A program made the position numbers and the translations under genes. Under the pieces are notes generated by a model, which ran no database searches, was not told where the DNA came from, and was given only the letters and a program-made list of their open reading frames with translations. DNA of 64,000 bases from the NCBI RefSeq assembly GCF_001194135.2, contig NC_068982.1, positions 163,872,095 through 163,936,094 on the forward strand, written 5' to 3'. Position 1 is the stretch's first letter, and every line of letters begins with the position of its first letter. Source of the stretch: Octopus bimaculoides. Lineage: Eukaryota. Below, piece by piece: positions 3,673 through 45,269 of this stretch.

Positions 3673-3746
3673 TGTTGTGTGAAAGTAGAACACCCTTATT
3701 TGGTTGGCTCCTAATGGACTGTGCCACAATAAAAATGGACTTGCGC

Positions 3747-3788
<42 letters not shown>

Positions 3789-3800
3789 CGACCTTGAAAA
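3673..3800 (+). repeat. 5' LTR head, containing a (GA)n run
   Basis: tgttgtgtgaaagtagaacaccc...gagtcggcgaccttgaaaa aligns with 6125-6223. Confidence 0.8.
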
Positions 3801-3978
3801 GAACTGTGTTGTTCAGTGTTGAATCAATGATTGGTGCGGATAGGTTATCCTTTATTGAAGGTCCTCCCTAGTGGGGTTACCTATTGTTGGAACTGTTAAA
3901 CCATTGTTGATTGGCTGTTGTATTGTTTGGTTTTGCTTTTATTTTCTCCTTCAGTTGGGGCGAAAATAGCAGTAAGCA

Positions 3979-8148: not shown

Positions 8149-8831
8149 ATATGGATTAGAGCAAAGTAGCCTTGTTGCTTTGGTTATAGTCTACAACAAC
8201 TGACTTATTCCAACCCTCTTATGAATCCTCCTATGTATAAACGGATTGATAAAGGACCTGGATCGTCAAAAAAATACCAATCAGCATATAAAAGGGAAAT
8301 ATCTGACCTTGTACTGACATGTGATATAAAAGGTTTATGTAGATACCTTAATTTTGAGAGATGGTAGTAGAAAATATATGAGACATGGAAATACTAGTTA
8401 CTCACTGCCCCACCCCAATATAACAGAATAGGCTACAGCAATACCAAATAAACACAAAAGAGGAAATCAAATTGACTTTTAAAACACAGCTGAGCCAACT
8501 AGATGAAATGTTGCAAGTTTTAGAATACAGAGAAAGAATCTTTATTCCAGACAACTATTAGCCATGTTAGTACAAAATTGATAAGGAAAACGTTAATGGT
8601 GGTTAAAGTGAAAGTCAGGATAATGATAAGAAAGAGGAAGGAGTGGTTGATTATAATAATGATGATGATAAAAAATATTCACACACTCATGTGCACTCGC
8701 ACATGCATATGCACACAGACACTCAGACGCACACGCACACATAGAGACACACACACACACACACACACACATTGGTCACTAATGTTTCCTCAATACAAAG
8801 TGCACACATGTCCACCCATTTGTTAATATAT

Positions 8832-9047
8832 TGGTTTCAAATTTTGGCACAAAGCCAGTAATTCTGGAAAAGTGGGATAAGGCAATTACATTGACCTCAG
8901 TGCTCAACTGCTATTTGTTTTATTGTCTCCAAAAGGATGAAAGGAAAAGTTGATCTCAGCAAAATTTTAATTCTGAATGTAAAGATGAATGAAATGCCAC
9001 TAAGCATTTTGCCTAATGTGCCAACAATTCTGCTAGCTTGCTACCTT
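8832..9047 (-). mobile_element. tRNA-derived SINE, family A
   Basis: Reverse complement of the family A layout (tggtttcaaattttggcac...ctacctt). Confidence 0.7.
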
Positions 9048-9539
9048 ATCATAAGCTAATATATTAACAAACTAACGTACTCCCATACACTTAGTGCACA
9101 AACTTTAAGATGCATAATGTTAAAAAACACAGTATACTTCAAAGCCAGGCAAAACAAATCCTCCCAGAGGTGAACAAAAATGACAGATCAATATTTCACT
9201 GCTGTCCTGAAATACGTGCAGAAAGTGTAAAATCTATATGCTAATGTGCATGTGTATAGTATAAATAGTATATATTGTATAAATACAATGAGCAATATAA
9301 AAAAGACAGCACAAGAGGAAAAAAGTTTGATAAATAAGGTATTAAGTAAAAAGATCTGTCTTAAAACATCACTGTAAAACTACACAAACATAGATGCACA
9401 CATTGACATCTACACACTAGAAATGAGCTAACAGTGCTGGCTCAGATAAGTGAAGCTCTGAACATATGAAAGGAAATTCTTGGTAACGAAGGCTGATAAA
9501 AAAATATTTAAGATCTATAAAATAATAATCATAGTTACA

Positions 9540-12930: not shown

Positions 12931-13593
12931 GGCTGTTCAAGTGCGTTCTTTTAAATAGAAAAACAGTTAGTATGAATCACCATAAGACATTTTTGTGTAT
13001 AAATATATTGTTTATTCTGTGTTCACCTTTTGTGGTGGAAGAATGTAGTATGATACAAAGATATGTGTGTTTACATACAAAGAAAATTTTGCTTTTTGCT
13101 TTTGCATTGAAAGAAGTAACATAATATTTGTATTACAGTATGTATGCATGTGTGTAATGGGAAGCCATTTTGAGAAAGTGTGTGTGATAAAATACCTTCG
13201 TTTACAAACCATATATCTTGTGTCGAGGTGAATAGACATGTGAGTCGCACGTGGAAGATTGCGCGTGGAGCTGCAGAGAAGATATGTGTCTTTGACCAAA
13301 GCCTGACAGGAACTGAGGCAAATTCTACAGTAGACCCAGAACGAGGCTGTTCAAGTGCGTGATATTAAATAGAAAAACAGTATGAATCACCATAAGACAT
13401 TTTTGTGTATAGATATATTGTTTATTCTGTGTTCACCTTTTGTGGTGGAAGAATGTAGTATGATACAAAGATATGTGTGTTTACATACAAAGAAAGTTTT
13501 GATTTTTGCTTTTGCACTGAAAGAAGTAACATAATATTTGTATTACAGTATGTATGCATGTGTGTAAAGAGAAGTCATTTTGAGAAAGTGTGT
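12931..13593. repeat. About 250-bp direct repeat (12931-13183 and 13345-13593) around a 161-bp spacer
   Basis: Near-identical blocks ggctgttcaagtgcg...ttttgagaaagtgtgt. Confidence 0.85.
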
Positions 13594-13734
13594 AGCTTTG
13601 CCACATAGCCTCCTGCTAGACTTGAAAAAGTCAAGAAAAGGTAAAGAGATGGCGCATGTAAACATGCAGTGTAGAAAAGCAGGTAAGAACATGGAATACA
13701 AGCAGAAGAATGCAATACAACAAAAAATGAGAAA

Positions 13735-15712
13735 TCCAAGTGTCTGGTTTTTCTCGGAGAGTACTTGTTAGGCTTCGAGCGCAGGGCAAAGGTGAGTGGA
13801 TAGTGGTCTGTAAAAATCGTGAATTGGCGTCCCTCGAGTATGTGCCAGAAATGTTTGACTGCTAAATACATAGCTAACAGCTCCCGTCCGAAAGTGCTGT
13901 AGTGAGTTTCAGCTGGTTTAAGCTGCCGAGAGAAAAAGGCAAGAGGCTGGAGTTGTTGCTGGTGAAATTGCTGTAACACCACGCCTATGGCGGTGTTGGA
14001 TGCATCCACTACAAAGGAAAAGCTGAACGTCCACGACAGGGTGGGAAAGAAGTGGTGCCTGAGTGAGTTGCTGCTTTGCTGTGTTGAAGGAGTCTAGCTG
14101 GGTGGAGTCCAACGCTATCGGCTCATTCCTCTTTTTGCTATTCCGAAGGAGCGTGTTTAGCGGATATAGGATTTCAGCTGAGTGAGGAACAAAGCACCGA
14201 TAGAAGTTGAAAAGTCCCAAGAAATGTCGGAGCTGACGTAACGAGGTGGATGGAGGTAACTTCTCAGGCAGTGGCGATATGCCTTCGGGGCTGATGATGT
14301 GACCTAGGAAGGTCAAAGAAGATGCGCTGAAGACATATTTGGTAGGGTTGATCCGCACTTGGTAAGTTTTGAATCGCTCGAACAGCTGACGTATATGATG
14401 GAGATGTTCCTCGGGTGAGGCGCTAGCTATCAAGATGTCGATGTACGCATAGATGATGCCTAAGTCTCGGACGACTTCGTTTATGAACCTTTGAAATGTA
14501 ATGGCTGAATTCCGCAAACCAAATGGCATAGTTAGGAATTCGAAGGCGCCAAAAGGAGTGGTCACGGCAGTCTTTGGAATATCCTCTGGATTTATCTGAT
14601 GGTATGACTTAACCAAGTCGAGTTTGGTGAATACTCTGCAGTTGTGGTGAGATGACGCAAAATCCTGATTGTGGGGTATTGGGTATCTGTCAGGCACCGT
14701 GATGGAGTTTAATCTCCTGTAGTCACCAGTGAACCGCCAGTCCTCGGATCGCTTTGGAACCATGTGCAAGAGTGGTGCCCAGGGGCTATTAGAGAGGCGG
14801 ATGTTGCCCAACTGGACCATGTGGTTAAATTCCGCCTTTAGCTTCTTCGAGAAGAGGCGGCGAGGGCGAGAAAAAACCGGAGCACCTTTAGTTTCGATGA
14901 AATGGGTGGTGGTGTGAATTGGAGTAGCAGTAAAAAAAATTAGGTTAGTCAGCTCCGGATATGAGTTTATGAGTGCATGGTATAGGTCGTCTGTGGCAAC
15001 AATGAAAAAGACTAGACTAACCGCAGGGGTTAATGGCCTTTTACCTGGGATAGAAAGTTCTGTGGTCGCGTCCCATAAGCACCGAGTGCGCATGTCCACA
15101 AGCAGGTGAAAGTGGTGCAAAAAGTCTGCACCTAATATTAGGTAAGGGAGATCTGCGACTGTAAAAATCCACTTGAAGTCACGTCGCAGATCTAAATCCA
15201 ACGAACGAGATATCTGGCCGAAAGTTGGAATCGGTGAATGGTTCACCGCCTGTAGAGTCACTGGTGATAACAGCTGCAGAGAATGTGCCGTGCTGGTTGG
15301 TCGTTTTCCTGTTGAGAAAAAGTACAGGGTTTGGGCACGTTTACGTGCTGAATCTTGAAAACTTGGCATGGTATCCGCATATGGATAAATGAGCAGAGGA
15401 CGAGCGACGGCGAGGTGAGAAGGAGCGATCGAAAGAACGCCGTATGGATGAACGTAACCTGCAAGTGCGAAGGAGCTGCGTTTCTCTCGTTAATTCAGCT
15501 ATCGCCTTTAGGATAGCAGCCGAAGCAAAGTCCTTATCAGTGGAAACTGACGCTACTGGTGGGTATACAGCGGTATCCGGTGGTACTGGGGTCGGCTTGG
15601 TGGTGTTGCCGGTATACTCTATGATTCTGTCGGCGGTGGAGGCTGTTTGCTCGACGTGAGTCGTCTCCACCATAGAGGTTAGGATGGCTTGAACGTTAGA
15701 GTGCAACCGGAG
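13735..15712 (-). pseudogene. Ty3/gypsy gag-pol fragment (gag C-terminus, partial protease, RT, RNase H; no integrase)
   Basis: gag ...CGYHAKF; ILGADFL; [28 protein letters not shown] and YID(D)IL with one Asp lost; RNase [19 protein letters not shown] and FTDHYPL. Confidence 0.9.
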
Positions 15713-15769
15713 AAAAATAGTTGTTTCAATAAAGCACAATCAGCAGGTGCATTTTGGGCCAATTCCTAA

Positions 15770-21460: not shown

Positions 21461-23417
21461 ACACATACGTACATTTTTGAGAAATTAGACGTCTCAAAAT
21501 CAGAAAGGAGAAAGCTGATTCGAAGATTACAGATCTAATCCATTACTGGAACTGTGGAAATCTGTAAAATTTTCAAGAAGTTTATTATTTAACTATATAT
21601 GAGCATGTATAGATGTGCAAGTATATGCATGAGAATATATACGTAAAACAAAACATACAAATCTGCACGTATACATACATACATACATACATACATACAT
21701 ACATGCATACAAAAGTACCCTGTTGTTGATATTGAAATTTCCAATGAAGGAGCCTTGGATCTAGGTTAGAAACCGGTACTTTCTCTATTGGCAAGGAATC
21801 TTGAAATAAAACTGAATAATCACATACATTAATGCATACATACAGGCATACATATATTCTTGTTTCCATACATAACAATAATTACTGGTGTACTTAGTTT
21901 GCTTAGTAAATTCCTAAGTGACGGGTCTGGAAAATCTGGAAAACTGAAAATATGAAACATTATTACTCAAGTGTAAATGTAAATTTGTTTTTGTTATCCA
22001 TATTCAAACGATGGAGCTTTGTGTGTTTGTTAGAAACCAACTCCTTCCTTATAGAAATACTTCAAATAATTAAAAATTGAAGAGAACATACATACATACA
22101 TACATGTTGGTTTCTAATTTAAACACATACGCCAAAAATACATTATTTGGTTTGTTACAGGTATCATGATCAAGGTACTGTTGGAGTTTTGCTAGGTGAA
22201 CATGATGCAGATTTTACGTATTTTGTATGTAGCCATACTGATGAAGTATATCTATATAAAACCTATATGAATATATCACATTTGTGTGTATGAAAGATGG
22301 GATAGATTAAGAAGAATAACAGCTGGGGGCGAACTTTGGCTTTCATGCGTCTGGAGTCAATAAATCAAATCGTGGTAATATACTCTGAGTAGATTTAATC
22401 GTTTATATGATACTCTTCATTATGAAATTCTAGTTTTGTGCTGATATATGAAATCATTGAATGTTCGTGTGTGTATTTACATGCACACACGCACGCGCGC
22501 ACGCACACAGAGTTACTGTTACTTGTACGTATAATAGACTCTTGTATGTGTATATGCTTAACTCAAAGTGAATTGTGTGGATAGCCTTCAGATTAAATTT
22601 CTGTTAATTTGGCCACTATTAAAGATAACGTCAATAAATCCCATTCACTCTCTGCACATTTCAGTGTATGAGGTCAATAGTAATTGGCCCTTTAGTAAAT
22701 GAAAGGTTAAATAATTGACTAGTTGTTGCTGTTTATTAGACTCCAGTAACCGCTCTTTGAACAGACTTGTGATCAAAGGAGTTTCAACTGCAACAATCAC
22801 GTTAGTTTTCTCAGCCACAGTATATCATAGACTACACTTTTGAGTACGTCGTTTTTTTTTTTATGATGGTACGAGGAAAATTTTGGTTACTATTTCTTGT
22901 AATTCAAGCAATCAAGCCGTGGCTCCAACGTTATTGTTTAACTCAAGATTAACACTGGTCAAGTAGAGTCAGGAGTAAAGGCATTCAAGTCATCCAGTAT
23001 TTTGTTCAGAAATGATGTATCTAGGGCTATATCATCTAATGTATCTGTTGCTTAGTATGTATGTATGTGAAGCTGCGTGTGAATGATATAACAACACCAA
23101 GCAAACATTTAATAGTAAATTTTATTTCACCGCATAAGTAATATTGAGGTTGGTCATGAATTAGAAAGTTCCAGAACAGGTCAACACAATTGAAGAAATA
23201 AATCAGTAGTATTCATAAATAATTGATTACAAAAGTTCTATACTGAGATTTGTCAAGACAGTAAATATATATACAGTAGATTCATTTCGGTCAACTAAAC
23301 CGACGTATCCAAGGTGAGCAGATAGTCGTAGAAATGACTATTATAAACGGCAAGAGAGTATGTGTAGCAAGTCGGCAGATTATAACGCACTCTGAAAGTT
23401 GGCGCTAAAAACAAGCC

Positions 23418-23493
23418 TTTATATAACCCTTGTAGGGAAATGTTCCAGAAGGATCGAGATTGATCTATCACGCGAAGTCTGGCTGCTGATTGG
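23418..23493 (-). promoter_or_regulatory. Pol II promoter module P1: CCAAT - GCGTG - HSE-like - TATA, pointing left
   Basis: Minus strand: CCAATCAGC (23493-23485), GCGTG (23473-23469), ctcGATccTTCtgGAA (23458-23443), TATATAAA (23425-23418). Local sequence is CpG-rich and not an obvious repeat. Confidence 0.6.
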
Positions 23494-24394
23494 CAAATAA
23501 TTCGACCTCTCACTTGAACAAGGCTGTGCTATGCCATGACATAAACTTCGTAATTTGCCGACTCGGTTTCGAGTCTTGTTAAATGTCCTTCCATCGAATT
23601 ACTGCCTGGTGGGAAGGGAAGTGATCACCCGCAGGAAAAATCAGGCTGTGAATGAAGGAAATGTGACTAGTATTCTATCAAATCGAACGCCCACATAATG
23701 GATTCGCAAATGACTATTGCTATCAGAGTATGTAAGAGAATTAAACAATTAAATTATTTGAAATGTTATACAGTAGTATTATAACCTCAAAGAGTTCAGT
23801 ATGTGTTGGTCTCTTTGATGTTTAAGACAAATATAATTAATCTTGTTTTAGTGTAGAGCAGGGAACTGATTGCCTGCAGGAAAAATTTCGCATGCGTTCA
23901 AATTTGAATCCGCCCACCAAGAAAGTTCTTTAACACCTACCTAAAAAAATAGTTTTAAGTTTAAGACTAAAAGAGTAATTTAATTTATTTTAAATACTCC
24001 ATAAAGCATAAAGAAATTGCTTTTAATAGTAATATTTGTTTTGTGATATTATTAATTAGTCGGAATACATATGGAGTAATGACGTAATAATCACTATTGC
24101 AACCAATTACTATTCAGCATTTGTTCTTCCTCTTTAATACCTCAAAATTCGCATCGCTTGTGGGAATTTATTCTGTCTTATTAGGTATTGATGTCTGTGA
24201 TAAGCAGTCAGTGTGAATTTAAGCTTTGTCCAGGTTAGTTGTCGTCTACGTAATTGCAAATTAAGTGCAATGATTTCGAATGCTGGCAACATTTATGGTT
24301 AAGTTGCCTATTTTAATTAAAGGTTTTAAATCAATATTGTAAAGGGCATAAAAGTAACCTCTTTTGTAATCGTTTTAATATTAAGAAAAGACAA

Positions 24395-25600
24395 AATGCT
24401 AGCGGAGAAAATTCTTTGCTCAATGGAAAATGGGCGGATAATTTTTTTTTTTTCCTCAGAAATAAATGGAAAGTGTATGTTTTAAATTTATAAAGATTCG
24501 GTTGTAGTTAAAAAAGCATACAATCTTGAACATGATTATTTGACCAACCATAAAGAATACTAAAAGTGAAACGAGCTTTGCATTTAAACAAACTAACATT
24601 TCTAAAAGAATTTTATGCAAACAGCAATCTACTTTTTTAAAAAGGAACCTATTAAGGAAAATTCCTCTGCAATGTGAGCACATCTAAAACGAATTTCTTA
24701 AAGAGTGTATGTTGCTATTGCACAAATTTTAACTCTAGAAAAGTTAAATTGAGTAGATTAACTGTCAGGAGGATAATTTCTGAACGTATAAAAGACATGA
24801 AATTGAGTTTTATTCGATAGTTGCAAGGTGAGACAACAGATATAATAAATCCGAAACAAGAGAAACAATTAGTCGGCAAATTAATGAATAGAAATTTACT
24901 TGCCTTAAAATCGATATATGAAACTATCAGAGAGGATTTTTTTTTCTGAAGTTAAATTAACAATAAATTATCTTGATTTAATCGTGGAGAAACTTAGAGG
25001 TGCAGTTATGGTCGGTGCTAAATATAGAGTCGGATTTCAAAAAGGACATTCTTCAATCGAGAGAGAATTGGTGAATTGTCAGCCAGATTCTAATATCTTA
25101 AATAGTGTCATTTCTTTAGTCACCAATATAATTTTTGGTTTATTCTCCCTTAGAATTAACAATGTAATGAAAATGATAACAAAATGCATTAAATCAATAA
25201 AAGACAGGAAATGAACATAGAATTTAAAGACATTTTGAAGGATCCCGAAATATGAATGTTCATTGCCAAAACTGACAATATATGTTCAAGCAATTCTAAG
25301 AACTGTAAGATGAAATGACTCTTTATGATGTTAAAGGCGTTCACATTATGGAATCAAAGGACAACACATGTTTATATGAATTTGGCATTTTTACTGATAT
25401 CACTAACCAGATAAATGATTCATGTTTGAAATAACAAGGCTGAAATCAGTGTCTCAGGATCACTGATTCAGTCCTTGTATCAATACCAAGAACTTTGAGT
25501 CAATGCTGTGATTGTTTGTAACTCACCTGAGACCATTCGAACATTGAGACGTTACATTTTCCAGCACTCGTTGAAAGAACAGAAAACAGAATCGAGATTG
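24395..25600 (+). pseudogene. Decayed hAT transposase (GTF2IRD2/SPIN-like), internally deleted
   Basis: BED-like W..FFF..EINGKC...YNL..DYLTNH; LSRLTVRRI...GETTDI; FFTDITNQIN...QG.NQ; HFPAL. Confidence 0.6.
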
Positions 25601-27026
25601 GAATAATTTTTCACTAGTTTCAATCATAAGATTATGACTGACTATGACTGAGCCTGTTCATTTCTGCCTGGAACTTATTTTATCGGTCTAAAATTTTTGG
25701 ATCACTAATTTATGCAGTTTGACGCTACATCGGCAAACATAAACACTCGCACATCTAATTATCCACCCGTCTATCCGTCCGCCCATTCATTCCATGTGAT
25801 AAATCCCTCAACTGATTGAAGTGAGAAGACATGCCTTAGCAATCGATATAAGGCTTGTATCATTTTAACAGTATTTCTTTAATGTTCATCAATACGGTCA
25901 ACGTGTTTCCGTGTTCAAAAAGAATAGCAAAACCTGTTATAATGTTCGATGAGTAAATCTGGCATTGGAAACAAAACTTTGTATCCCATTTCTCCTTATT
26001 GCTCTAAGCAAGTTTAAGGGTTAATCCGAACCTATAAATGAAATATATCTACTTTTGACAAATCATGCATTAGAAATTGCAACACTACTTTCTACTGTGT
26101 TGACGATTTGAATTGATTTTCTCGACATAAAAAGTAGTCAAGAGCCACCTGCGTTGCTTGGATTACAGAGATAGCAAAACAGCAACAACAGCCGTGACAG
26201 CAATGAATACAACGACGAAAATAATAACAGTGTCATTAACATCGTCGTTATAATATTCTCGATGTTATCACATTGAGAATATTATTAAGTCACTCTATCT
26301 CTTAGAAATAGCAGCAGAATAACCCTCAAAGAACACCTTCCATGAAGACTTAGTAAAGCACGCGTTGGATAACGTGGATGGGCTACCTATCTAGTTTTTT
26401 GACTTGCAATACACAACAGATAAATCTTTGTCATATTACATTATAGCGTCTTAAATATGGAAATGATGCACTGCGTAATGTAAATCTTTCAAGACACTCT
26501 TACGAAAGGGGGCTGATCACGGATAGAATAAGTTTGAACATAGGTTTCCTCGATTAGGGTATACTTATATGCATGTATGCGCATGTATTATGTATCAATG
26601 TTTGTATATATTCATATCTACTTGTTTCTGAACGTATATATGTATATACGTCTGTATGTATGTGTGTAGTCATCTACATGTGCGGGTGTAAACACACTCA
26701 CACTTTCTCATATACACACTTTTTCTTATTAATATTTAGCAGAAGCAACAGAATGACTCAAAGGTTGAGAGTTTCGTGCACTGGCACTTATCAAGCTAGT
26801 TACAAATCGAAGGGCTGTAAAATTTATATACTGGTGATAATAGTAGTTATACATGTATATTCACTCAGATTTGAGTACGCGAGAGTGTATGTATGCATAT
26901 TTAAGAACACTTATGCGCCTATGTGTATATACTCTTGTTTCGCTTTATGTAGATATATCTATGCGTGTGCATATATGTATATGTGTGTGTACGTGTGAAT
27001 CCATAATCATGCATGTACGACCGTGA

Positions 27027-27060
<34 letters not shown>

Positions 27061-27849
27061 NNNNNNNNNNNNNNNNNNNNNNNNNNNNNNNNNNNNNNNN
27101 NNNNNNNNNNNNNNNNNNNNNNNNNNNNNNNNNNNNNNNNNNNNNNNNNNNNNNNNNNNNNNNNNNNNNNNNNNNNNNNNNNNNNNNNNNNNNNNNNNNN
27201 NNNNNNNNNNNNNNNNNNNNNNNNNNNNNNNNNNNNNNNNNNNNNNNNNNNNNNNNNNNNNNNNNNNNNNNNNNNNNNNNNNNNNNNNNNNNNNNNNNNN
27301 NNNNNNNNNNNNNNNNNNNNNNNNNNNNNNNNNNNNNNNNNNNNNNNNNNNNNNNNNNNNNNNNNNNNNNNNNNNNNNNNNNNNNNNNNNNNNNNNNNNN
27401 NNNNNNNNNNNNNNNNNNNNNNNNNNNNNNNNNNNNNNNNNNNNNNNNNNNNNNNNNNNNNNNNNNNNNNNNNNNNNNNNNNNNNNNNNNNNNNNNNNNN
27501 NNNNNNNNNNNNNNNNNNNNNNNNNNNNNNNNNNNNNNNNNNNNNNNNNNNNNNNNNNNNNNNNNNNNNNNNNNNNNNNNNNNNNNNNNNNNNNNNNNNN
27601 NNNNNNNNNNNNNNNNNNNNNNNNNNNNNNNNNNNNNACCCTGCATTGCCCGGGTTAAAGAGAATAATGAAATTTAAAAACGCTGTCTAGATTACGCAGG
27701 TTTCAACTGCTAGTAGCTGAGATACCAACTTTCTACATTAACAACTCTCCAACCCATGCCAGCATGGAACATAGACGTTAACTGAAATGGTAAAAGAAAG
27801 TTTTCAACTCATATGTATATAAAGTAAATACACGTCATTAAAAACACGT

Positions 27850-28530
27850 TTTGTGTAGCTTATTTGGTCACCAAAAAAACAAACAGGTACAGATTATAAA
27901 CAATGAAAGGCCGGTTTTGGTGATTCATTTGACAGAGGTATTAGAGAGCCAATTCGATGATAAACCTGACCTTGGATCTTGAAAGTTTGCATAAAATCTG
28001 GCGCAGTTAAATTTCTTGTGGCTCCAAATGATGTCAACTGTAGTGCAGCATTGTATTGTCTAATTTTGTTTTGGAAGTGCTTGATCAGTTGATGACAACA
28101 GTTTCTTCAATGGCTCTGGAGGTTGGGGGATTGCAGGGAGTTTAACCTTTCCACCACTGCAGCACAGTGCAGGTGTCTCTCCAGGCCACCTCCTTGCTTT
28201 ATGATGTATGCACTCAGTTGTCATTGCACCAATGGAAACTCTAGTGTCATCTGCATAATGAACTACTGGATCATATTTGAAAGCTGCTTCATAGAAGTTG
28301 CTACCTTGAGCTGTTGCAACTGCTCTTCGTACTGCAGTGGAGATCCTATTCCTTGTCAGCCGTGCATACCTCTGTTCATTAGTTTGTGATGCTCTGGCTT
28401 TTGTAGTGCACAGTCTGTTCGTCTCTTGGTATGCTTCCCTTTTTGTAGCTGTCTCTCTTTCCTTGGACACAGACATTCTTTTGGCTGACCTTGACATTGT
28501 AGACAAATTTGATACTTTCTTTCCAGGCAT
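27850..28530 (-). pseudogene. Helitron RepHel N-terminal fragment
   Basis: AAFKYDP...IGAMTTEC...GETPALCCSGGKVKLP...PPEPL; after a frameshift IRQYNAALQLTSFGA...FKIQGQVYHRIGSL. A possible A|TC 5' end is at 28787. Confidence 0.85.
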
Positions 28531-29186
28531 GGTAATATAGGTATACAAAAATACATGGGTTCTGCAGATAGTAAACAATGAAAATAACTGGGTAACGGAA
28601 ATTATATTTCTTAATACAACGGACGGAAAGTAAATTAGAAATTTTTACGGAAAATAAAGAACTGTACGGGCTGAAGCGAAATTTGTGATTGAACCAAAGA
28701 GCCAGTATCGAAGGAACCAGATAAAGAGATATAGAGAGATAAAGGTAGATAGAGGTGGATAGAGAGGTATAGATAGAGAGATATAGATGTCACTGACGCA
28801 AGAAAATATGTTGAAAAACTTTCAAAGACGTGAATCTAATATCAAAAGTAACATTTAAAATTGTTTTTATGACCAATGGATGTAAGGAAGACAATTTCTG
28901 AAAGTTACTTCGTAAAAAAAGTTACCTCTGTACGCCACGTAACCCAGGAACGGGTTTTTTCTGCCCGTTACTCATTATGTGAAAACTTTTAAGAGTCTAA
29001 AACCACCCCTGGAACATAAATAATGTATGTTTCCAGTTTGGAGAAAATCAGTTGAAAAATACGCCGTTATAATCTTTTATACACACACAGAGACTGTATA
29101 GATAAATACATGTATGTATGTATACTGTTTTGTCTGGGGAGAGTCATTCTCTTTTAGTGCCTTATAAATCCAAATCCCAAAACGAA

Positions 29187-29269
<83 letters not shown>

Positions 29270-29794
29270 NNNNNNNNNNNNNNNNNNNNNNNNNNNNNNN
29301 NNNNNNNNNNNNNNNNNNNNNNNNNNNNNNNNNNNNNNNNNNNNNNNNNNNNNNNNNNNNNNNNNNNNNNNNNNNNNNNNNNNNNNNNTATATATACATA
29401 CATACACATACGTATTTGCTGTGTATATATTCACTGGCACTCTCATACATGTGTGTGTAAGTATGCACAATTTTTCCCTATTTATTTATTTATTTATTTA
29501 TGTATTTATTTATTGCACAGCGAAATGGGCAAAATATTTGAAAAATATAAATTATCTGCGTGACATTGTAATTGTTTTTATAATTTGTTCCAGAACTATC
29601 CCGGGAAATACTATCATCACCTCTATATAAATTTACTATACTATGTAATAATATAGAAATTCTATTATCACCTGTATATATGTTTATAACACCTCGAGTT
29701 GTAATTAATTTGATAAGTGCTAACGCACAAAACTCTCAGCCCTTGAGTCACTCTGTTGTTTCTGCAAAATATGAATAAAAAATATGTATATATT

Positions 29795-29960
29795 CTTTTA
29801 TTCTTTTACTTGTTTCATTCATTTGACTACGGTCGCACTGGAGCACCGCATTTAGTGGAACAAATCGACCCCAGGACTTATTTTTTGCAACCGTAGTAAT
29901 TATTCTATCGGTATCTATTGCCGAACCGCTAGGTGACGGAGTTGTAAACACACCAACATC
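29795..29960 (-). mobile_element. SINE family B, 3' half
   Basis: ttttattcttttacttgtttca...ggagcaccgc...ccaggactta...ccgaaccgctagg...aacacaccaacatcgg. Confidence 0.7.
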
Positions 29961-32000
29961 GGAGACGACGGAAGGCCCGTAGGTTCCTCCGACGAAGGGG
30001 TAGGGTGGAGGGGTGGAAAAGGAGGGGAAAGGGTGTGTGGTTAGGGGGTTGGCGTGGGGAAGGAGTGACGGTGGTGGTGTGATCAATTCCACGAGCGTGG
30101 ACAAGGGCGGTTTGGACAAGGGTTGAGGGGTATCCTCGATGCATGAACAGGCGGGCAAGGTACTGGGATTGGGTCTCAAAATCCTGGTCCCGGCTGCACA
30201 AGCGTCGGATGCGGAGGAACTGGGAGTAGCGGATTGCCCGTTTGGTGTGGAAGGGATGGGAGGAGGAAAAGTTGCAGTAGAAGTGGGAATCTGTGAGTTT
30301 GAAGAAGGCGGAGATGGTGAGAGAGTGGGAGGGGTGGTAAATGGTAAGAGAGATATCGAGGATGTTAACGGAGGTGTTAGAAATAGTAGAAGTGAATTGG
30401 AGAGCGGGTGGAAGTTAGAGAGGAAGTTATACAGTCATCTATGTAGCGATCGTATAGCTCTGGAGTCGGCCCGGAGAATTGGAAAAATGCTTGGGCTTCA
30501 ATGTGACCAACAAAGAGGTTGGCGAAATTGGAGCCCATTCTCGTTCCTATTCGCGACCCCAGACTGCTTTTGGTAGGTTTCTCCGGTGAACGTAAAGCAG
30601 TTGAGGGCGAGGACGAGCTCTGCCAGGCGAAGAAGGGTGGAGGTGCTGGGTGTGGGATCAGGGCAACGGTCGAGGAAATATTGGAGGTTTAAGAGACTGT
30701 CGTTGTGGGGAATCACCATGTACAGGAATTTGATGTCCAAGGTGAAGACGAGGTGTGAGGGGCCGGGAGGGAAGGAAAAGGAATTGAAGAGGCGAAGGGC
30801 GTGATTAGTGTCGTGTATTTGGGATGAGAGGGCAGCAACAATGGGAACACGATGCAGTCAAGGTATTTGGAAATAAGTTCGGTGGGGCAGTTACAGGGAG
30901 AAACAATGGGGCGGCCAGGGTTGTTGGGTTTATGTATTTTGGGAAGGAAATAGAGGGTGAAAGTACGGTGTGTTCGGACGATGAGGTTCGTGGCGGTGGG
31001 GGAGGAGAGCAGAAGAGGAGATGAGGTCATGGATGGTGGAGGACACTCGCTGTTGGTAAGAAGAGGTTTGCCGGTTTGATGGTGATGTCGTTGCGGCGAC
31101 GAAGGTCGCGAAGGGCGACCAATTCAGCACGGGTGTGGTTGGCTCGGCGGGAACTTTTTGAAATTGAATCGCTCGACTAACGCATNNNNNNNNNNNNNNN
31201 NNNNNNNNNNNNNNNNNNNNNNNNNNNNNNNNNNNNNNNNNNNNNNNNNNNNNNNNNNNNNNNNNNNNNNNNNNNNNNNNNNNNNNNNNNNNNNNNNNNN
31301 NNNNNNNNNNNNNNNNNNNNNNNNNNNNNNNNNNNNNNNNNNNNNNNNNNNNNNNNNNNNNNNNNNNNNNNNNNNNNNNNNNNNNNNNNNNNNNNNNNNN
31401 NNNNNNNNNNNNNNNNNNNNNNNNNNNNNNNNNNNNNNNNNNNNNNNNNNNNNNNNNNNNNNNNNNNNNNNNNNNNNNNNNNNNNNNNNNNNNNNNNNNN
31501 NNNNNNNNNNNNNNNNNNNNNNNNNNNNNNNNNNNNNNNNNNNNNNNNNNNNNNNNNNNNNNNNNNNNNNNNNNNNNNNNNNNNNNNNNNNNNNNNNNNN
31601 NNNNNNNNNNNNNNNNNNNNNNNNNNNNNNNNNNNNNNNNNNNNNNNNNNNNNNNNNNNNNNNNNNNNNATGTGGAGTGGAGTGGTGGATGCGGGATTGG
31701 GAGGGGTTGGGGAAGCTGAAGGTGAGGGTATCGGGGGTGTAGGAGGGGAAGGGTTGAGGAGTCGGTAGAATTTTTTTGTTTTTGTGTGTGAGGAAATTGT
31801 AGAGTTTGTAGTTGAGATAAAGAAGGAAGCGGAGAATGAGTTGGGTGAAGGGTGGAGGGTAGGGGGAGGAGAGGAAAAAGTAAGCTTGGGGAAGTCGGTG
31901 GTCAAGAGAGTGAAGGAGGGAGCAGGTGGAACGGATGGTGGCACGGATGAGGAGGCGGGAAGTGCAGGAGAAGGGCTCTGAACAGTTTTCATCTACCAAA
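29961..32000 (-). pseudogene. Penelope-like element RT fragment (GIY-YIG region absent; gap at 31186-31669)
   Basis: YFLPKIHK...GRPIVS, MDIKFLY..IPH, LAELVL..NCFTF, RYIDD at 30434-30448, then LFMHRGYP. Confidence 0.9.
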
Positions 32001-32403
32001 TGTCATTCATAAGATATTGGTGACCCTGAAAGTATGGTAGAAAACCCATGTTCAAAACGTCGTGAAGTAGACTCGAGCACGCAGCTACCTGTTTATATAT
32101 ATTGTACAAATAGGATAAATAATGCATTTGACTTATGCATATTTCGTTAAATAAACAGCAATTAAACTCGTTTAATACTTCTGTATCGGCATGTTTAATT
32201 AGTATGATAGTGAGGTACACGTAAAGAATAGAGAAACCAAACTAAGCTTCCAGCCTCGTATGTAGCCATCTTTTGACTGAAGATGTTAAAATAGGATTGT
32301 GGTTAGTGTGTCTACATGTCAATAAAATAAAACATTGTCGAGGTAACTCGAAGCCGAATCCCTGTATATGCGGTCAGGTATCACGAGGAAATCACCATAG
32401 TTT

Positions 32404-32501
32404 CACGTGGTCGGTTTATTAACCAACCAATCAGCGTGAAGCGATGGCGTGGACAGGTTTCCTCGAACATTCTAGAATTTGACTTCCAGTCCCCTATAAA
32501 A
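32404..32501 (+). promoter_or_regulatory. Pol II promoter module P2: E-box, CCAAT, GCGTG, perfect heat-shock element, TATA
   Basis: CACGTG 32404-32409; CCAATCAGC 32427-32435; GCGTG 32447-32451; cGAAcaTTCtaGAAt 32464-32478 (three nGAAn units); TATAAAA 32495-32501. A CpG-rich unique segment follows to about 33030. Confidence 0.7.
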
Positions 32502-33907
32502 CCCGTTCGACACGCATTTTTACCGGTCAGCCGACCCAAGAAGGTGGTTGAGACAGATGGCACAGATAGATGATGATAGAAACCTCCGTCGCCACGAATA
32601 TAGCACAATTGTTTCTAGTTACAATGGGCAAGTCGTATGTTGCCGTATCAATAGCTTGCCGTAAACGTCAAGCAGTATCTCTCTCCAAGTTGGCAATCAT
32701 TGCTGCCGTCAGCTGTGAAAGGCCAACGCAGTTTGTCTTTATTTGCGGTAATTAAATCTGTTAAATGTCCGCGGGTGTTGTTCAGTTACTTCTACTCGCA
32801 GCCCGAGAAACGTATTTTCATTCATCAACTGAACCAGCTACCACAGTAGCCAACAACAGTCATACCCATGCGACAACATCAACACAAAACCACCGTTGAC
32901 TAGGAGAGTGTGAACTGATAGCGAGTTGGATAATGAAGTGGCTATACTGTAACGATTTGTGCGTATCAAGAAGCAATCAATGGTGACGATTATTATATAA
33001 AAAGTGTGTTTGCATTGGAAGGAAGAGATGGAAGTAATTTTATTCATTTATGTATATATTTTCGTATTTTCATTTTTAATATAGTTGTTTCTGCAGTCTG
33101 TAAAAATAGATATTTTTTAAAACTGAATTGTTTTTGTGCATATATGTTTACAATAACTTATCGAATGAATATTGATAGTGTTTTAACGGTGTTAATTAAA
33201 AATTGGTTTCTTTATATACTTTGTTAAAATTTCGATTTCTTATTAATTAGTTGGAAGTTTTATATATGATTTTTGTGTGTTTATGTATGTCTAAACAAAT
33301 TTATTGAATAATGCTAATGTATTATCAGTGCCAAGTTTTTGTTTATGGAGAATAGGTTTTCGTACTATAAGACAGGGATTCAGTTATTGTCTATTTTTAT
33401 GGGCAGCAACAACGAAATTGATTAAAAGAACACACATCTTTAGTTTACCTGGTTTGTCTCTTTGCTGTCTTCGGCTTGTTAAAAACAGCAGTTAAATTTC
33501 TCTCAAATAAAACCTTACACCCTTAAGAAAGGAAGAAACGAAAACTATCACAACTAATATGACTTTGATATTCTGCTCAGTGCTAAATAACAATAACCAG
33601 GTAAAATGACAATAAAAATTATAGTTTTATAGTTTTTACGCACACACACGCATACGTAGAGATGGAGTATGTTTATCAATTCTTCTTGTTCTTGTTCTAG
33701 TTGTTGTTGTTGTTGTTGCTGCTGCTGTATTTATGTTGACCACGTCATACCACATGCTTCGCAATTTCTATTGTTTTAGATAAAAGCCTTTTATATTCTA
33801 CTGTTTGCTTTAGTTTTCTTACTGTAGAGATCGTATATCTATTGGCAATAATAATTAATTTTTCATGCTTTTGTCTCTCCAATCTTTGCAGCAAATCTGA
33901 GAAAAAA

Positions 33908-41955: not shown

Positions 41956-42424
41956 TTCTTTTCCTTATTTTGATATGTACATGTGAATTCTTTTTGTTTT
42001 GTAGTTTCCTTCAAACGATAATAAATTTCGTTATTTCGTGCTGCTTTATGTTTATGTGAAGCTGTTTAATTTGCACTCAAATTCAAATGAAAATGCAATA
42101 ATGTATACAAATCTTCTATAATACAATTGTTATTTATTCCAGTTGAATATTGGCTAATAACTCATTTTATATAGCAAAACTAAATCTAAATTTAAAATAA
42201 TATCTCATTTCGGCGAATTTACTTGTAATAATAGTAATTTTGAGAGAAAATTCCATCAGCTTTATGTAAGAATATTTTGCTGAATTGTGTCTCGAACACA
42301 TTAAATACAGTTCAAGACACAATAAGAAACGGTCACAGCTTCAAAGGCGTGAAAGAATTGTGATTGCCTCTCCTTTAACGCCAAGTGAAATAACCCGAAC
42401 TTATCTCAGTATTTAACAACAGTT

Positions 42425-42742
42425 AAGGCAGCGAGCTGGCAGAATCGTTAGCACGCCAGACAAAATACTTAGCGGTATTTCGTCCATCTTTACCTTCTGA
42501 GTTCAAATTTCGCCGGGGTCGACTTTGCCTTTCATCCTTCAGGGGTCGACTTTGCCTTTCATCCTTCAGGGGTCGACNNNNNNNNNNCAGGGGTCGACTT
42601 TGCCTTTCATCCTTCAGGGGTCGACTTTGCCTTTCATCCTTCAGGGGTCGATAAAATAAGTACCATTCAAATACTGGAGTCGATTACATCGACTTACCAG
42701 CTTTCCTCGAAATTGCTGGTCTTGTGCCAAAATTTGAAACCA
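42425..42742 (+). mobile_element. SINE family A with an internal 27-bp tandem expansion
   Basis: Intact head aaggcagcgagctggcagaatcgttagcacgcc. The unit aggggtcgactttgcctttcatccttc repeats across 42515-42650 and spans a 10-N gap. Confidence 0.8.
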
Positions 42743-45269
42743 ATATTTGAAGTCATTTAGGACAAGAATTATTAGCAAACTTTGTTTTCTTCTTTAATTC
42801 TTGATATAAACGAAACATCAACTTAGCATTAAAAGAACTAATAATACTTTATCCTCTGGCTATGAAGTCTATAGACATACTTTTTGCATGCTAACTAAAC
42901 ACTGTCATTATGATTGTTTGCAAAAATTCTTTGTCTCTGATCATTCCTTTCCCGTCGGCTTCCAGAACATCTCCGTTTTTTAGACTCATTAGTTTTCTCG
43001 GCATTATAGCAATAAATCTATGGTATATGTAAAGATTCTTTTCTATATTAATAAGTCCTAAAACTTATTGGACAGAAGCTATTCGAACATTCGTATGTTC
43101 TCAGGTTAAACTTTCCGCCATCCAACTGCTGTTAATGTTTTGCATACCAGGTGACCAGGAAAATTTCTCTATACAGATTATAACTTAGAAAAAAAATCCA
43201 ACTGTGCGTTTATTAAACATTCTTTCATCTTCGAGCACTAGCTTTTTTTTAGAATTTTCAATTCCACCATTGATAGTTGTTAAAAGACATTCAGTACTAC
43301 GTTCATCTTCCAAAAATTATGCACTTCATTTCTCGTCAAATTTACAATTTTTAACTGTGGCTGCTGATAGAATAATGTCTCACTAAAATGCACGCAGCCA
43401 CTGGTGAATATAAATAACATTAGTTTGTTTTGTAGTCAAACGTTCCATAATTGCTAGATAGTTTAATTTATCAATTTTAAAGCAGCTGCAATTTATTTAA
43501 AAAAAGTTAATTAATTTAAACAAAACATTTATATTCATAGCAAGTTTCGTAAATATACAAGGGAATTGTATTTTGTAGAATATATAAACAAAAATGAAAG
43601 ACTGAAATATTTTAAAACACAGATGGCTTACAATTTTTGTACATCTAAGGATTTGAACAACGAAACAGTACATGAAATTAGCGTAAAAGTATTTAGTATG
43701 TTGTTCAGATATATGTGACATACCTCTTCCCCACTGCAAAACTGAAATATATACATGACTTTACTACACACATGTACATGAATATTTATACATATAGATA
43801 TTTATATCTATACCTATACACATATATACTGGACTCACGCGCGCACATGTGCACACATCACTTGCATATTCAGATAGCACACACATACACATCACATATA
43901 TTTGTAATGATAAACGCAATTAGGGGCATAACAAATGTGGGATGGACAAATGGTAAGATACTAGATAATGTGCTTGCAGATCATTAGTTCAAATCTGCTG
44001 CAGTTAATCCTATGTGCTTTAGAGAAGAATACTTCATTTTATATTACCTTACCAAAAATTACTATCGGTTTCGGGAACAGAAATTGGATTTATTGGGGTT
44101 TATTACCCGGTAGATTGCATTTATTGCCCAAATGATTGAATAACTAGTATGGTACTTGTATTTACAACTGTTTCAGCTAGTTTGATGTATAGTATAGATA
44201 TGCTTCATGGTTGCTTGAATCTGATGGGAAAACGTTTTGTAATTCGTAGGATAGCATTGTAGCCTTCACATTCAATGTTACTGCTACTTCTACATGTAAT
44301 TTCAGATGTTAGTTGTAGTTTACATTGGATAAACGTTTATGTCTCTCGAACGGCTCAAAGATGTAACCTAGTTTCGCTTATAAAACACGCCTTTCTTAAA
44401 TACTATTTGTTTAAGTCTCAAATCTTATGCCAACATACACAATGACTTATCACACAAAATCTATGATTTATAAGAGTGACTATGTTATTCTCATCGATCT
44501 TCGCTGAATAACAGAAGTGATTTGGCTTCATGGAATAATTAGAATTCCATAACAAACTCTGGAATCTTATGCCGAAAGCTAACCTCATTTTTCATACGTT
44601 CGTCAGGAAAACACACACTCATATACACTCGCACACACAAGAAAAAAACTATTACTATAATGCTAATCAGACGATGAGAAGAAATAGTATCGAAGTGAAG
44701 TCATTCCTTAATATAAGATATATCACAGACATATATCTTACGGCAGTCAATGAAAAACATGCTATACTGTCTTTCTGTCAGTGTTAAAACTTTAACCATT
44801 AAGTTTCGGCGAAAATTTGCAAGATCTAAAAGTTCATCTGATTTAATCGGTTTATTTATGTATGGATTTTACCACAGACATCATGTCATTTACATATTGA
44901 AGGCTCCTTATCTTGTTGAAAAATATTGAAATAAATATTGAGGATGACATAATCAGACCAATTCCTCGTTTGACAATAATCGAATAGCCAAAGTTTCTAT
45001 TGATTTTCTTTTAAATAATATTGTTATATCTATGTCTATTTTCCATGCTCATAGTTGAATACAATTGTGTAGTTTTATGGTATTGTTTCTGAGTGCAGTC
45101 TCAGAGTATAATGGCATGGAACGGTATTACTTTCAAAATTATAGTAGAATGGTGATAGTAGAATGGTGATAATAGAATTGAAAGCAGGGTTTGGATGTTA
45201 GCATTTCTTTATTACTATGAGCTAAGAAAGAATTCCTTCGTTTTACATATTAATGCCACTTCTTGTAGT

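What the first reader, a model, noticed from the sequence alone, without database searches (positions are those of the whole stretch)
23418..32501. Twin divergent promoter modules with identical spacing of CCAAT, GCGTG, heat-shock element and TATA
Seen in sequence: P1 (minus, 23493-23418) and P2 (plus, 32427-32501) both read CCAATCAGC-N11-GCGTG-N10-[16-mer]-N17-TATA. The 16-mers are ctcgatccttctggaa and ctcgaacattctagaa (13/16 identical), while the spacers themselves are largely unrelated. P2 has a perfect three-unit HSE; P1 has an imperfect one. Established knowledge: nGAAn arrays bind HSF1, CCAAT binds NF-Y, and RCGTG is the bHLH-PAS (HIF/ARNT-type) core. Inference: four elements conserved at fixed spacing over diverged spacers points to selection on an old inverted duplication, giving a head-to-head pair of stress-inducible transcription units. 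No heat-shock protein ORF is visible after either TATA, so the products may be long-intron genes with non-coding first exons or stress-induced non-coding RNAs.
Basis: partly seen in the sequence, partly recalled or inferred. Interest (0 to 1): 0.75.

Follow-up and report, generated by a model that had tools for sequence, protein, structure and literature searches.

The report
Two old heat-shock-promoter repeat copies
The two "twin promoters" are real, but they are two decayed copies of a roughly 0.55 kb repeat present about 100 times in this genome, most likely solo LTRs of a retrotransposon that carries an HSP70-style promoter, and not a pair of host stress genes.

Summary
Both sites read CCAATCAGC-N11-GCGTG-N10-16mer-N17-TATA at the stated coordinates. 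This gives 2 hits against 0 expected.

The interpretation mostly does not hold. Genomic contigs of the source organism and three relatives cover each module, plus about 300-400 bp downstream of it, at 16-80 times single-copy depth. The flanks are single copy. P1 and P2 are only about 60% alike, yet each has tens of relatives elsewhere that are at least 80% alike. They are therefore separate insertions from different subfamilies, not a local inverted duplication.

Each unit has LTR architecture. It starts with TGTAG/TGTCG. It then carries a shared upstream element, CCAAT, GCGTG, an HSE and TATA. About 250-300 nt later come AATAAA/ATTAAA and a GGTGTTGTT block, and then about 100 nt more. P2 has TGTCG...CGACA ends and a 4-bp direct repeat, a combination found at 0.3% of control placements.

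No chaperone coding sequence, paralogous exon, Rfam family or protein homologue was found. RNA is absent or at background. One relative has lost P1's HSE and TATA at the same locus.

Heat inducibility is untested. This is an ordinary finding: a new member of the known class of transposable elements that carry heat-shock elements.

The parts
32336..32875 (+). P2 repeat unit (LTR-like, 540 bp). Ends TGTCG...CGACA, flanked by the direct repeat ACAT (32332-35 and 32876-79).
   Evidence: Depth is 12-78 times single copy over 32342-32854 in organism A and in species B, C and E. The flanks 32000-32329 and 32855-33025 are single copy. The same geometry gives such a hit in 0.3% of 2911 control placements.
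32346..32360 (+). Upstream shared element ACTCGAAGCCGAATC, 81 nt before CCAAT.
   Evidence: Alignment. The distance is identical in P1.
32405..32410 (+). CACGTG palindrome (E-box-like). P1 has CAAGTG here. Many paralogs have an inverted ATTGG immediately after it.
   Evidence: Sequence. Loose-end consensus sequences.
32427..32435 (+). CCAATCAGC (NF-Y-type CCAAT box).
32447..32451 (+). GCGTG core.
   Evidence: Paralogs read CGCGTG, CGCATG or GGCGTG.
32460..32477 (+). Heat-shock element TCCtcGAAcaTTCtaGAA (3 perfect units and 1 imperfect).
   Evidence: Paralogs have TTCtaGAAtcTTC in the same register.
32495..32501 (+). TATAAAA box. The inferred transcription start lies near 32525-32530.
   Evidence: The start site is inferred only.
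32513..32569 (+). Variable segment just after the TATA box. It is rich in indels among the copies.
   Evidence: Depth dips to 12 times single copy, and replaced segments appear as joints.
32751..32782 (+). Poly(A) signal block: ATTAAA (32751-56), about 18 nt, then GGTGTTGTT (32774-82).
   Evidence: The paralog consensus is GCGATAATAAAATCT|GTTAAATG.
23016..23583 (-). P1 repeat unit (LTR-like, about 570 bp). It starts TTTAAC, a decayed form of the family's TGTAGC, and ends ATACA. The 3' end could lie as far as 23005.
   Evidence: Depth is 6-43 times single copy over 23010-23581, with single-copy flanks. Contigs of three species stop at 23578-23581. The next letters there read CTACA on the plus strand and are then unrelated.
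23560..23574 (-). Upstream shared element ACTCGAAACCGAGTC.
23485..23493 (-). CCAATCAGC.
23469..23473 (-). GCGTG.
23438..23455 (-). Imperfect heat-shock element GATccTTCtgGAAcaTTT.
23418..23425 (-). TATATAAA box.
23407..23462 (.). Segment holding the HSE and TATA box that is missing from the orthologous contig of species E.
   Evidence: contig record 29. Its positions 3654 and 3655 join window positions 23463 and 23406.
23090..23126 (-). Poly(A) signal block: AATAAA (23126-21), about 22 nt, then GGTGTTGTT (23098-90).
   Evidence: This is the part of P1 with the highest copy number, 43 times single copy.

Best explanation
P1 and P2 are two separately inserted, old copies of one dispersed repeat family with units of about 0.55 kb. 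They belong to different subfamilies.

Each unit is built like a retroviral-type long terminal repeat (LTR). It starts with TGTAG or TGTCG. Next comes a U3-like part of about 190 bp holding the promoter: a shared upstream element, one or two CCAAT boxes, a GCGTG core, a heat-shock element and a TATA box. An R-like part of about 250-300 nt follows, ending in AATAAA/ATTAAA and a GU-rich block. A U5-like tail of about 100 nt ends in ...ACA. At this locus both copies stand alone in single-copy DNA, so they are most likely solo LTRs.

The fixed spacing of the motifs over unrelated spacers was preserved by selection on the element's own promoter in its active lineages, not by selection on this host locus. 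When active, such a promoter would let HSF and NF-Y drive element transcription under heat or proteotoxic stress. A solo copy would at most produce a short polyadenylated read-out of about 250 nt.

Shown: the multi-copy status, the boundaries, the motif content and the lack of detectable RNA. Inferred: the LTR class, the start and poly(A) sites, and heat inducibility.

My confidence that this is a dispersed repeat and not a locus-specific promoter pair is about 0.9. My confidence that it is specifically an LTR is about 0.6.
For: Copy number: summed contig depth is 1400-4400 against a single-copy level of 50-56 over 32342-32854, and 360-2330 over 23010-23581. Three related species give similar ratios, and the flanks are single copy.

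Subfamilies: P1 and P2 align only as conserved blocks with a global z-score of 4.2, and blastn at E<0.01 does not link them. Each nevertheless recruits tens of contigs at 80% identity or more.

Termini: paralogs of both subfamilies begin TGTAG with unrelated upstream letters (loose ends after 23578 in species C and E, loose ends before 32348 and 32356). P2 has TGTCG...CGACA plus ACAT/ACAT, a combination seen in 0.3% of control placements.

Internal architecture: TATA is followed 256 nt (P2) or 299 nt (P1) later by ATTAAA or AATAAA and then GGTGTTGTT. The paralog consensus keeps AATAAA.

The family keeps the HSE, GCGTG and CCAAT.

Decay: changes among the copies are dominated by C>T and G>A. 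Species E lacks the HSE and TATA of P1.

No gene: no chaperone coding sequence, no shared exons between the two downstream flanks, no Rfam hit and no protein homologue for the P2 ORF.

RNA: 0 reads at 95% identity in three runs. At 80% identity only 10-23 reads per 12 million were found, on both strands and over the promoter as well. Sixteen RNA assemblies of the organism hold none of the k-mers of either transcribed part.
Against: No full-length element was seen, meaning paired LTRs around gag-pol with a primer-binding site and a polypurine tract. The genome itself could not be searched with these tools.

P1 lacks clean TG...CA ends and a convincing target-site duplication.

The ACAT before P2's TGT also appears before TGTAG in one group of paralogs. 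P2's 4-bp direct repeat could therefore be partly coincidence or a target preference.

The 3' boundaries are blurred because alignments stop at 32837-32854 and at 23005-23062.

Two family members within about 9 kb is unexpected for about 100 copies in a large genome, unless more diverged copies are far more numerous or the region is a trap for insertions.

P2 keeps an intact module and a high CpG content: its U3-like part has an observed/expected ratio of 1.39 against 0.67 for the window. Residual activity is therefore not excluded.
Confidence: 0.6

Rival explanations
1. The units are copies of another kind of mobile or dispersed repeat, not LTRs. Candidates are a non-autonomous DNA element or an unclassified repeat that captured an HSP70-type promoter. 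In this reading the resemblance to an LTR is superficial.
For: The multi-copy status and defined 5' end fit any transposable element. No paired LTRs, primer-binding site or gag-pol were seen next to either copy. P1 has no clean target-site duplication.
Against: A complete promoter followed by a poly(A) signal inside one roughly 0.55 kb unit, with TG...CA ends and a 5-bp terminal inverted repeat, is the signature of an LTR. There are no long terminal inverted repeats, no Helitron TC...CTRR ends and no poly(A) or simple-repeat tail of the SINE or LINE type.
Confidence: 0.2
2. The units are a dispersed family of self-contained small genes. Each would make a heat-inducible, polyadenylated non-coding RNA of about 250-300 nt, and the family would have spread by DNA duplication.
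For: Each unit holds a promoter, a transcribed stretch without a conserved ORF and a poly(A) signal. The best-conserved parts are the promoter and the poly(A) block.
Against: No such RNA was found in any RNA data set of the organism. There is no Rfam match. The copies decay like neutral sequence, with a CpG transition bias and loss of the promoter in one species. Sharp TGTAG ends with unrelated flanks point to insertion, not segmental duplication.
Confidence: 0.08
3. One reading: a head-to-head pair of host stress-inducible transcription units, derived from an old inverted duplication and kept by selection at this locus.
For: The divergent orientation and identical motif spacing are as described. 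P2's module is intact and rich in CpG. Both copies are present at the orthologous loci of several related species.
Against: Each copy has tens of closer relatives elsewhere. The two downstream flanks of 23 and 31 kb share no exons. There is no chaperone coding sequence. A poly(A) signal lies 250-300 nt downstream of each TATA. No transcripts were seen. P1's HSE and TATA are deleted in species E. The orientation rests on unverified scaffolding across three gaps.
Confidence: 0.04
4. P1 and P2 are the two inverted terminal repeats of a single DIRS-like retroelement lying between them, as in Dictyostelium DIRS-1, whose repeats carry a heat-shock promoter.
For: The units form an inverted pair about 9 kb apart with degenerate retroelement-like ORFs between them. 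DIRS-1 repeats are reported to hold an active heat-shock promoter (PMC2685390, citing Zuker et al. 1984, PMC345129).
Against: The two arms are only about 60% alike, while each has closer relatives elsewhere. Both promoters point outward, not inward. No reverse transcriptase or tyrosine-recombinase domain was detected among the internal ORFs. About 340 nt of single-copy DNA separates P2 from the nearest internal ORF.
Confidence: 0.02

Closest known systems
ONSEN (ATCOPIA78), the heat-activated Ty1/copia retrotransposon of Arabidopsis
   Same: HSE-like sequences sit in the U3 part of the LTR, so the host's heat-shock factors drive the element. Copies can confer heat responsiveness on neighbouring genes (PMC13602373; PMC6927752 introduction).
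   Different: ONSEN is a plant element with known full-length copies and shown heat induction. Here only isolated units were seen, in an animal genome. The superfamily is unknown, induction is untested, and a CCAAT box and TATA box are arranged as in animal HSP70 promoters.
DIRS-1 of Dictyostelium discoideum
   Same: It is a repetitive retroelement whose terminal repeats contain an active heat-shock promoter (PMC2685390, citing PMC345129 and PMC368762). The repeats occur in inverted orientation.
   Different: DIRS repeats are the two near-identical ends of one element that encodes a tyrosine recombinase. Here the two copies belong to different subfamilies, point outward, have TG...CA-type ends, and no such genes were detected.
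Helitron-borne heat-shock elements in Caenorhabditis
   Same: A transposable-element family spreads HSF binding sites through a genome. [quoted passage not shown]
   Different: In Caenorhabditis the HSEs lie in dense clusters inside DNA transposons and act as enhancers. Here there is one HSE inside a complete CCAAT-HSE-TATA core promoter, with its own poly(A) signal, in an LTR-like unit.
Divergent heat-shock gene pairs, such as Drosophila Hsp70Aa/Ab and C. elegans hsp-16 pairs (recalled from my own knowledge)
   Same: Head-to-head orientation of two HSE/TATA promoters.
   Different: Those pairs are each other's closest paralogs and drive chaperone coding sequences. Neither holds here.

Membership tests
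LTR of an LTR retrotransposon (solo LTR) | Dispersed, multi-copy, with single-copy flanks | tested here: met
   Depth is 16-80 times single copy in four species, and the flanks are at single-copy depth.
LTR of an LTR retrotransposon (solo LTR) | 5'-TG...CA-3' ends forming a short inverted repeat | tested here: inconclusive
   P2 has TGTCG...CGACA, and paralogs of both subfamilies start TGTAG. P1 has TTTAAC...ATACA, which is decayed. The 3' ends of the paralogs were not seen.
LTR of an LTR retrotransposon (solo LTR) | Target-site duplication of 4-6 bp | tested here: inconclusive
   P2 has ACAT/ACAT. Together with its ends this occurs in 0.3% of control placements. However, ACAT also precedes TGTAG in one group of paralogs. 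P1 has no clean duplication.
LTR of an LTR retrotransposon (solo LTR) | U3-R-U5 layout: a TATA promoter and a poly(A) signal within the same unit | tested here: met
   TATA is followed 256 or 299 nt later by ATTAAA or AATAAA and then GGTGTTGTT. The layout is conserved between subfamilies and in the paralog consensus. This rests on sequence only; the start and cleavage sites were not mapped.
LTR of an LTR retrotransposon (solo LTR) | Full-length elements exist: two direct LTRs flanking gag-pol, with a primer-binding site and a polypurine tract | not testable with these tools
   The organism's genome is not in any searchable collection. There is no second copy in direct orientation in the window. 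Loci of relatives of the window's Gypsy fragment lack the unit.
HSF-dependent heat-shock promoter (HSP70 type) | At least 3 contiguous inverted nGAAn units in 5-bp phase close to a TATA box | tested here: met
   P2 has 3 perfect units and 1 imperfect, ending 17 nt before TATA. P1 has only 2 perfect and 2 imperfect. Paralogs have TTCtaGAAtcTTC.
HSF-dependent heat-shock promoter (HSP70 type) | Drives a chaperone or other stress gene | tested here: not met
A poly(A) signal follows within 300 nt.
HSF-dependent heat-shock promoter (HSP70 type) | Heat-induced transcription and HSF binding | not testable with these tools
   No heat-shock data set could be identified. The available RNA data show no transcripts or only background.
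Divergent paralogous gene pair from a local inverted duplication | The two copies are each other's closest relatives and have paralogous gene bodies | tested here: not met
   The copies are about 60% alike, while each has tens of copies elsewhere at 80% or more. There are no shared exons.
DIRS-like element with inverted terminal repeats | Near-identical inverted repeats flanking reverse-transcriptase and tyrosine-recombinase genes | tested here: not met
   The arms are about 60% alike. There are no Pfam hits for the internal ORFs.
bHLH-PAS (HIF/ARNT) response element | An RCGTG core that is bound and required for induction | not testable with these tools
   Only the 5-mer is present. It is moderately kept among paralogs as CGCGTG, CGCATG or GCGTT.

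The most novel reading that the evidence does not exclude
The family is, or recently was, a heat-shock-factor-driven retrotransposon of this animal lineage. Its roughly 100 dispersed LTR copies, P2 among them with an intact CCAAT-HSE-TATA module and undecayed CpGs, would still fire on heat stress. They would then seed heat-inducible promoters or short RNAs across the genome. That would be an animal counterpart of ONSEN or of the Caenorhabditis Helitron heat-shock elements.
Probability: 0.3. Interest if true: 0.5.

Novelty: new member of a known kind. Interest (0 to 1): 0.28.

Why it matters
As a pair of host genes the finding would have been notable, but that reading fails.

What remains is a repeat family that carries a textbook heat-shock promoter. 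Such families are known to tie transposon activity to stress and to spread heat-responsive regulatory modules near host genes in plants, nematodes and Dictyostelium.

If this family is heat-inducible, it would give a handle on stress-triggered transposon activity and on regulatory rewiring in this lineage.

For annotation the practical point is simpler. These sites should be masked as repeats and not called as promoters of unknown stress genes.

Tried and rejected

A gene downstream was looked for and not found:
- tblastn of the left-flank ORF pieces against the right flank found only simple repeats and one SINE-like repeat.
- Chaperone probes found nothing.
- The P2 ORF MMIETS...ICGN has no homologue among 5.8 billion proteins.
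- Reading the ORF pieces by eye showed only transposon fragments.

A structured RNA gene was looked for: no Rfam match on either unit.

A 54-58 nt mini-intron (GCG|GTAA...CGCAG|) that would keep the P2 ORF open was rejected. Most paralogs read GCGATAATAAA with no GT, P1 has no matching ORF, and no RNA read shows the joint.

The idea that the units are inverted repeats of one DIRS-like or Penelope-like element lying between them was rejected. The arms belong to different subfamilies, point outward, and are separated from the internal ORFs by single-copy DNA.

Attempts to fetch other family members failed:
- A spaced-motif scan of metagenome contigs gave two GC-rich chance hits.
- Loci of relatives of the window's Gypsy fragment come from another organism and lack the unit.

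Attempts to find a gap-free copy of the locus through four window ORFs failed, because none is on record.

A comparison of how well the P2 unit and its flanks are conserved between orthologs was inconclusive, because the difference table was truncated.

Full report
**Observation.** Both modules are in the sequence exactly as described. The strict spaced pattern CCAATCAGC-N11-GCGTG-N10-CTCGAnCnTTCTnGAA-N17-TATA, allowing up to three mismatches, hits only 23493-23422 (minus) and 32427-32498 (plus). Dinucleotide shuffles give 0.00 expected. A loose CCAAT...HSE...TATA pattern hits the same two sites against 0.05 expected. The similarity is therefore homology and not chance. P2 carries TCC-GAA-TTC-GAA in perfect 5-bp phase. 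P1 carries GAT-TTC-GAA-TTT. Alignment adds a shared element, ACTCGAARCCGARTC, exactly 81 nt upstream of CCAAT in both. It also adds a shared downstream block described below.

**Assembly gaps.** The three gaps inside the finding's span (27061-27637, 29270-29388, 31186-31669) all lie between the modules. Two of them abut (TA)n or (AC)n microsatellites. Independent genomic contigs of the same organism match 22110-24800, 32000-32460 and 32586-33680 without a single difference. Contigs of two related species span the whole P2 unit. The modules are therefore sound. The 8.9 kb spacing and the head-to-head orientation depend on scaffolding that I could not check, because four look-ups for a gap-free copy of the locus found nothing. 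The ORFs that the ORF listing reports across the gaps are artefacts of runs of X.

**What lies downstream.** No ORF of 90 residues or more follows either TATA box. Probes for HSP70, small HSP, DNAJ, HSP90, ubiquitin and HSP10 find nothing in the window. The 23 kb downstream of P1 and the 31 kb downstream of P2 share no coding pieces apart from simple repeats and one SINE-like repeat. Neither unit matches any Rfam family. The only sizeable ORF in the P2 unit has no homologue among 5.8 billion proteins.

**The decisive result: copy number.** I laid genomic contigs of the source organism (A) and of three related species (B, C, E) on the two regions at 80% identity or more.
- For P2, summed depth rises from the single-copy level of 50-56 to 1400-4400 over 32342-32854, which is 25-78 times single copy. 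It dips to 12 times over 32513-32569. It returns to single copy on both sides, at 32000-32329 and 32855-33025.
- For P1, depth is 16-19 times single copy over the promoter (23370-23549), 6-10 times over 23190-23369 and 24-43 times over 23010-23189. The flanks are again single copy.
- The ratios are similar in the other species.

Each module is thus the most conserved part of a dispersed repeat of about 0.55 kb with tens of copies.

**P1 and P2 are not sister copies.** They align only in blocks, with a global z-score of 4.2 against shuffles, and blastn at E<0.01 does not link them. Each nevertheless has tens of relatives elsewhere at 80% identity or more. They belong to different subfamilies and were inserted separately, so a local inverted duplication is excluded. 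Orthologous copies, or their k-mers, are present in all related species sampled. Both insertions are therefore older than those species splits.

**Anatomy of the unit: the 5' end.** The 5' end is sharp.
- Contigs of three species that match P1 stop at 23578-23581. The letters beyond read CTACA on the plus strand, which is TGTAG on the unit's strand, and are then unrelated to one another.
- Paralogs of P2 read ...ATAT|TGTAGCGAGGAT and ...ACAT|TGTAGTGGTGAT.
- P2 itself starts TGTCG at 32336 and has CGACA at 32871-32875. That is a 5-bp terminal inverted repeat, flanked by ACAT on both sides.
- With the same search geometry placed 2911 times across the window, TG...CA with a 4-bp direct repeat turns up in 5.5% of placements. 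Adding a 5-bp terminal inverted repeat reduces this to 0.3%.
- P1's ends are decayed (TTTAAC...ATACA) and it shows no clean duplication.

**Anatomy of the unit: the inside.**
- The first 190 bp or so hold the promoter. It comprises the upstream element, CACGTG or an inverted ATTGG in many copies, CCAATCA, (C/G)GCGTG, the HSE and TATA.
- A variable stretch follows.
- Then, 256 nt (P2) or 299 nt (P1) after TATA, comes ATTAAA or AATAAA, followed about 20 nt later by GGTGTTGTT. This is the standard arrangement of a poly(A) hexamer and a GU-rich downstream element.
- The consensus of 8-17 paralogs per species reads GCGATAATAAAATCT|GTTAAATG here. The hexamer is therefore the conserved feature, and not the GT that could pass for a splice donor in P1 and P2.
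- About 100 nt more lead to the end.

A promoter, a transcribed segment, a poly(A) signal and TG...CA ends within one repeated unit make up the U3-R-U5 layout of a long terminal repeat. Standing alone in single-copy DNA, both copies are best read as solo LTRs.

**Why the motifs are conserved.** Other family members keep CCAATCA, GCGTG and an in-phase TTCtaGAAtcTTC at the same places. More decayed copies have lost them, for example CCGATCAG, CTAAACAG and GCGTT. This fits selection on the element's own promoter in its active lineages, followed by neutral decay after insertion. Three observations support decay at this locus:
- Differences among copies are dominated by C>T and G>A.
- In species E the orthologous contig joins 23463 directly to 23406, which removes the HSE and TATA of P1.
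- P1's own HSE is imperfect.

My count of 31 of 34 matches in the motifs against 5 of 38 in the spacers is striking. It is also circular, because the motif limits were drawn from the matches themselves.

**Transcription.**
- Three RNA-seq runs of the organism, about 12 million reads sampled from each, give no read at 95% identity on 32000-33680.
- At 80% identity, which also admits paralogs, only 10-23 reads are laid. They fall on both strands and over the promoter as well, and none shows a joint. This is background, not a transcription unit.
- Sixteen RNA assemblies of the organism, from several studies, hold none of the sampled k-mers of either transcribed part.
- Low-depth RNA contigs of species B and E cover 22944-23101 and 22676-22929, just beyond P1's poly(A) block. 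Their origin is unclear.
- No heat-shock data set could be identified, so inducibility is untested.
- P2 keeps an intact module and many CpGs: its U3-like part has an observed/expected ratio of 1.39 against 0.67 for the window. Residual activity therefore cannot be excluded.

**Surroundings.** The region is dense in repeats.
- A Ty3/Gypsy pol fragment lies at 13.5-15.7 kb.
- Zinc-knuckle ORFs lie at 4.4-7.3 kb.
- Degenerate retroelement-like ORFs lie between the two units.
- A 140-nt inverted repeat lies at 26.7 and 29.7 kb.
- SINE-like repeats are present, along with many microsatellites.

None of these is connected to the two units.

**Comparison with known systems.** The closest functional parallels are ONSEN, whose LTRs carry HSEs (PMC13602373; PMC6927752), DIRS-1, whose terminal repeats hold an active heat-shock promoter (PMC2685390, citing PMC345129), and the Helitron-borne HSEs of Caenorhabditis (PMC6927752). 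Membership in the LTR class is supported by copy number, layout and P2's ends. It is not proven, because full-length elements could not be sought. Membership in the class of divergent heat-shock gene pairs, or of DIRS-like inverted repeats, was tested and failed.

**Verdict.** The promoter reading is plausible, but it belongs to a transposable element. The twin-gene interpretation is not supported. This is a new member of a known kind and of modest interest.

Noticed in passing
window 26711-26855 (+) and 29650-29790 (-): An inverted repeat of about 140 nt at 85% identity. It brackets about 3 kb that holds gap 27061-27637 and an ORF at 28060-28578 (minus) with a CCSGGKVKLP motif. From memory that motif recalls the N-termini of Helitron proteins, but there is no Pfam hit. 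The repeat could be the ends of a DNA transposon or two copies of a short repeat.
   Followed up: partly
window 8770-9060 (-) and 42420-42760 (+): Two copies of a SINE-like repeat. The second carries a 27-bp tandem array (GGGGTCGACTTTGCCTTTCATCCTTCA, 42515-42651) broken by a 10-N gap.
   Followed up: partly
window 13578-15739 (-): A Ty3/Gypsy gag-pol fragment with a reverse transcriptase domain (RVT_1, E=5.5e-26) and an RNase H part. It forms a GC-rich island (0.46) and has 2661 homologues at E<=1e-10. It is truncated and unrelated to the two units.
   Followed up: yes
window 4425-4727 (+) and 6811-7317 (+): Two similar ORFs with a CCHC zinc knuckle in a purine-skewed block with higher GC content (4-8 kb). 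They are probably tandem or nested fragments of a retroelement gag.
   Followed up: partly
window 29748-31999 (-): Degenerate retroelement-like ORFs, including FLPKIHKPNNPGRPIVS, which from memory resembles a reverse transcriptase motif of Penelope-like elements. They are interrupted by gap 31186-31669 and have no Pfam hit.
   Followed up: partly
window 23407-23462: The orthologous contig of related species E lacks these 56 nt, which hold P1's HSE and TATA box. This rests on one assembled contig.
   Followed up: partly
window 22676-22929 and 22944-23101: Low-depth contigs from RNA runs of related species E and B, at 94-96% identity, lie just beyond P1's poly(A) block. They could be read-through, intronic RNA or DNA carry-over. 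There is no counterpart in RNA of the source organism.
   Followed up: no
window 22470-22559 and 33482-33538: Short stretches at very high copy number, about 370 and 40 times single-copy depth. The second is followed by an A-run in the paralogs and is likely the tail of another retroposon.
   Followed up: no
window 32336-32526: P2's promoter part is unusually rich in CpG, with an observed/expected ratio of 1.39 against 0.67 for the window. Paralogs differ from it mainly by C>T and G>A changes, so this copy appears less decayed than most.
   Followed up: partly
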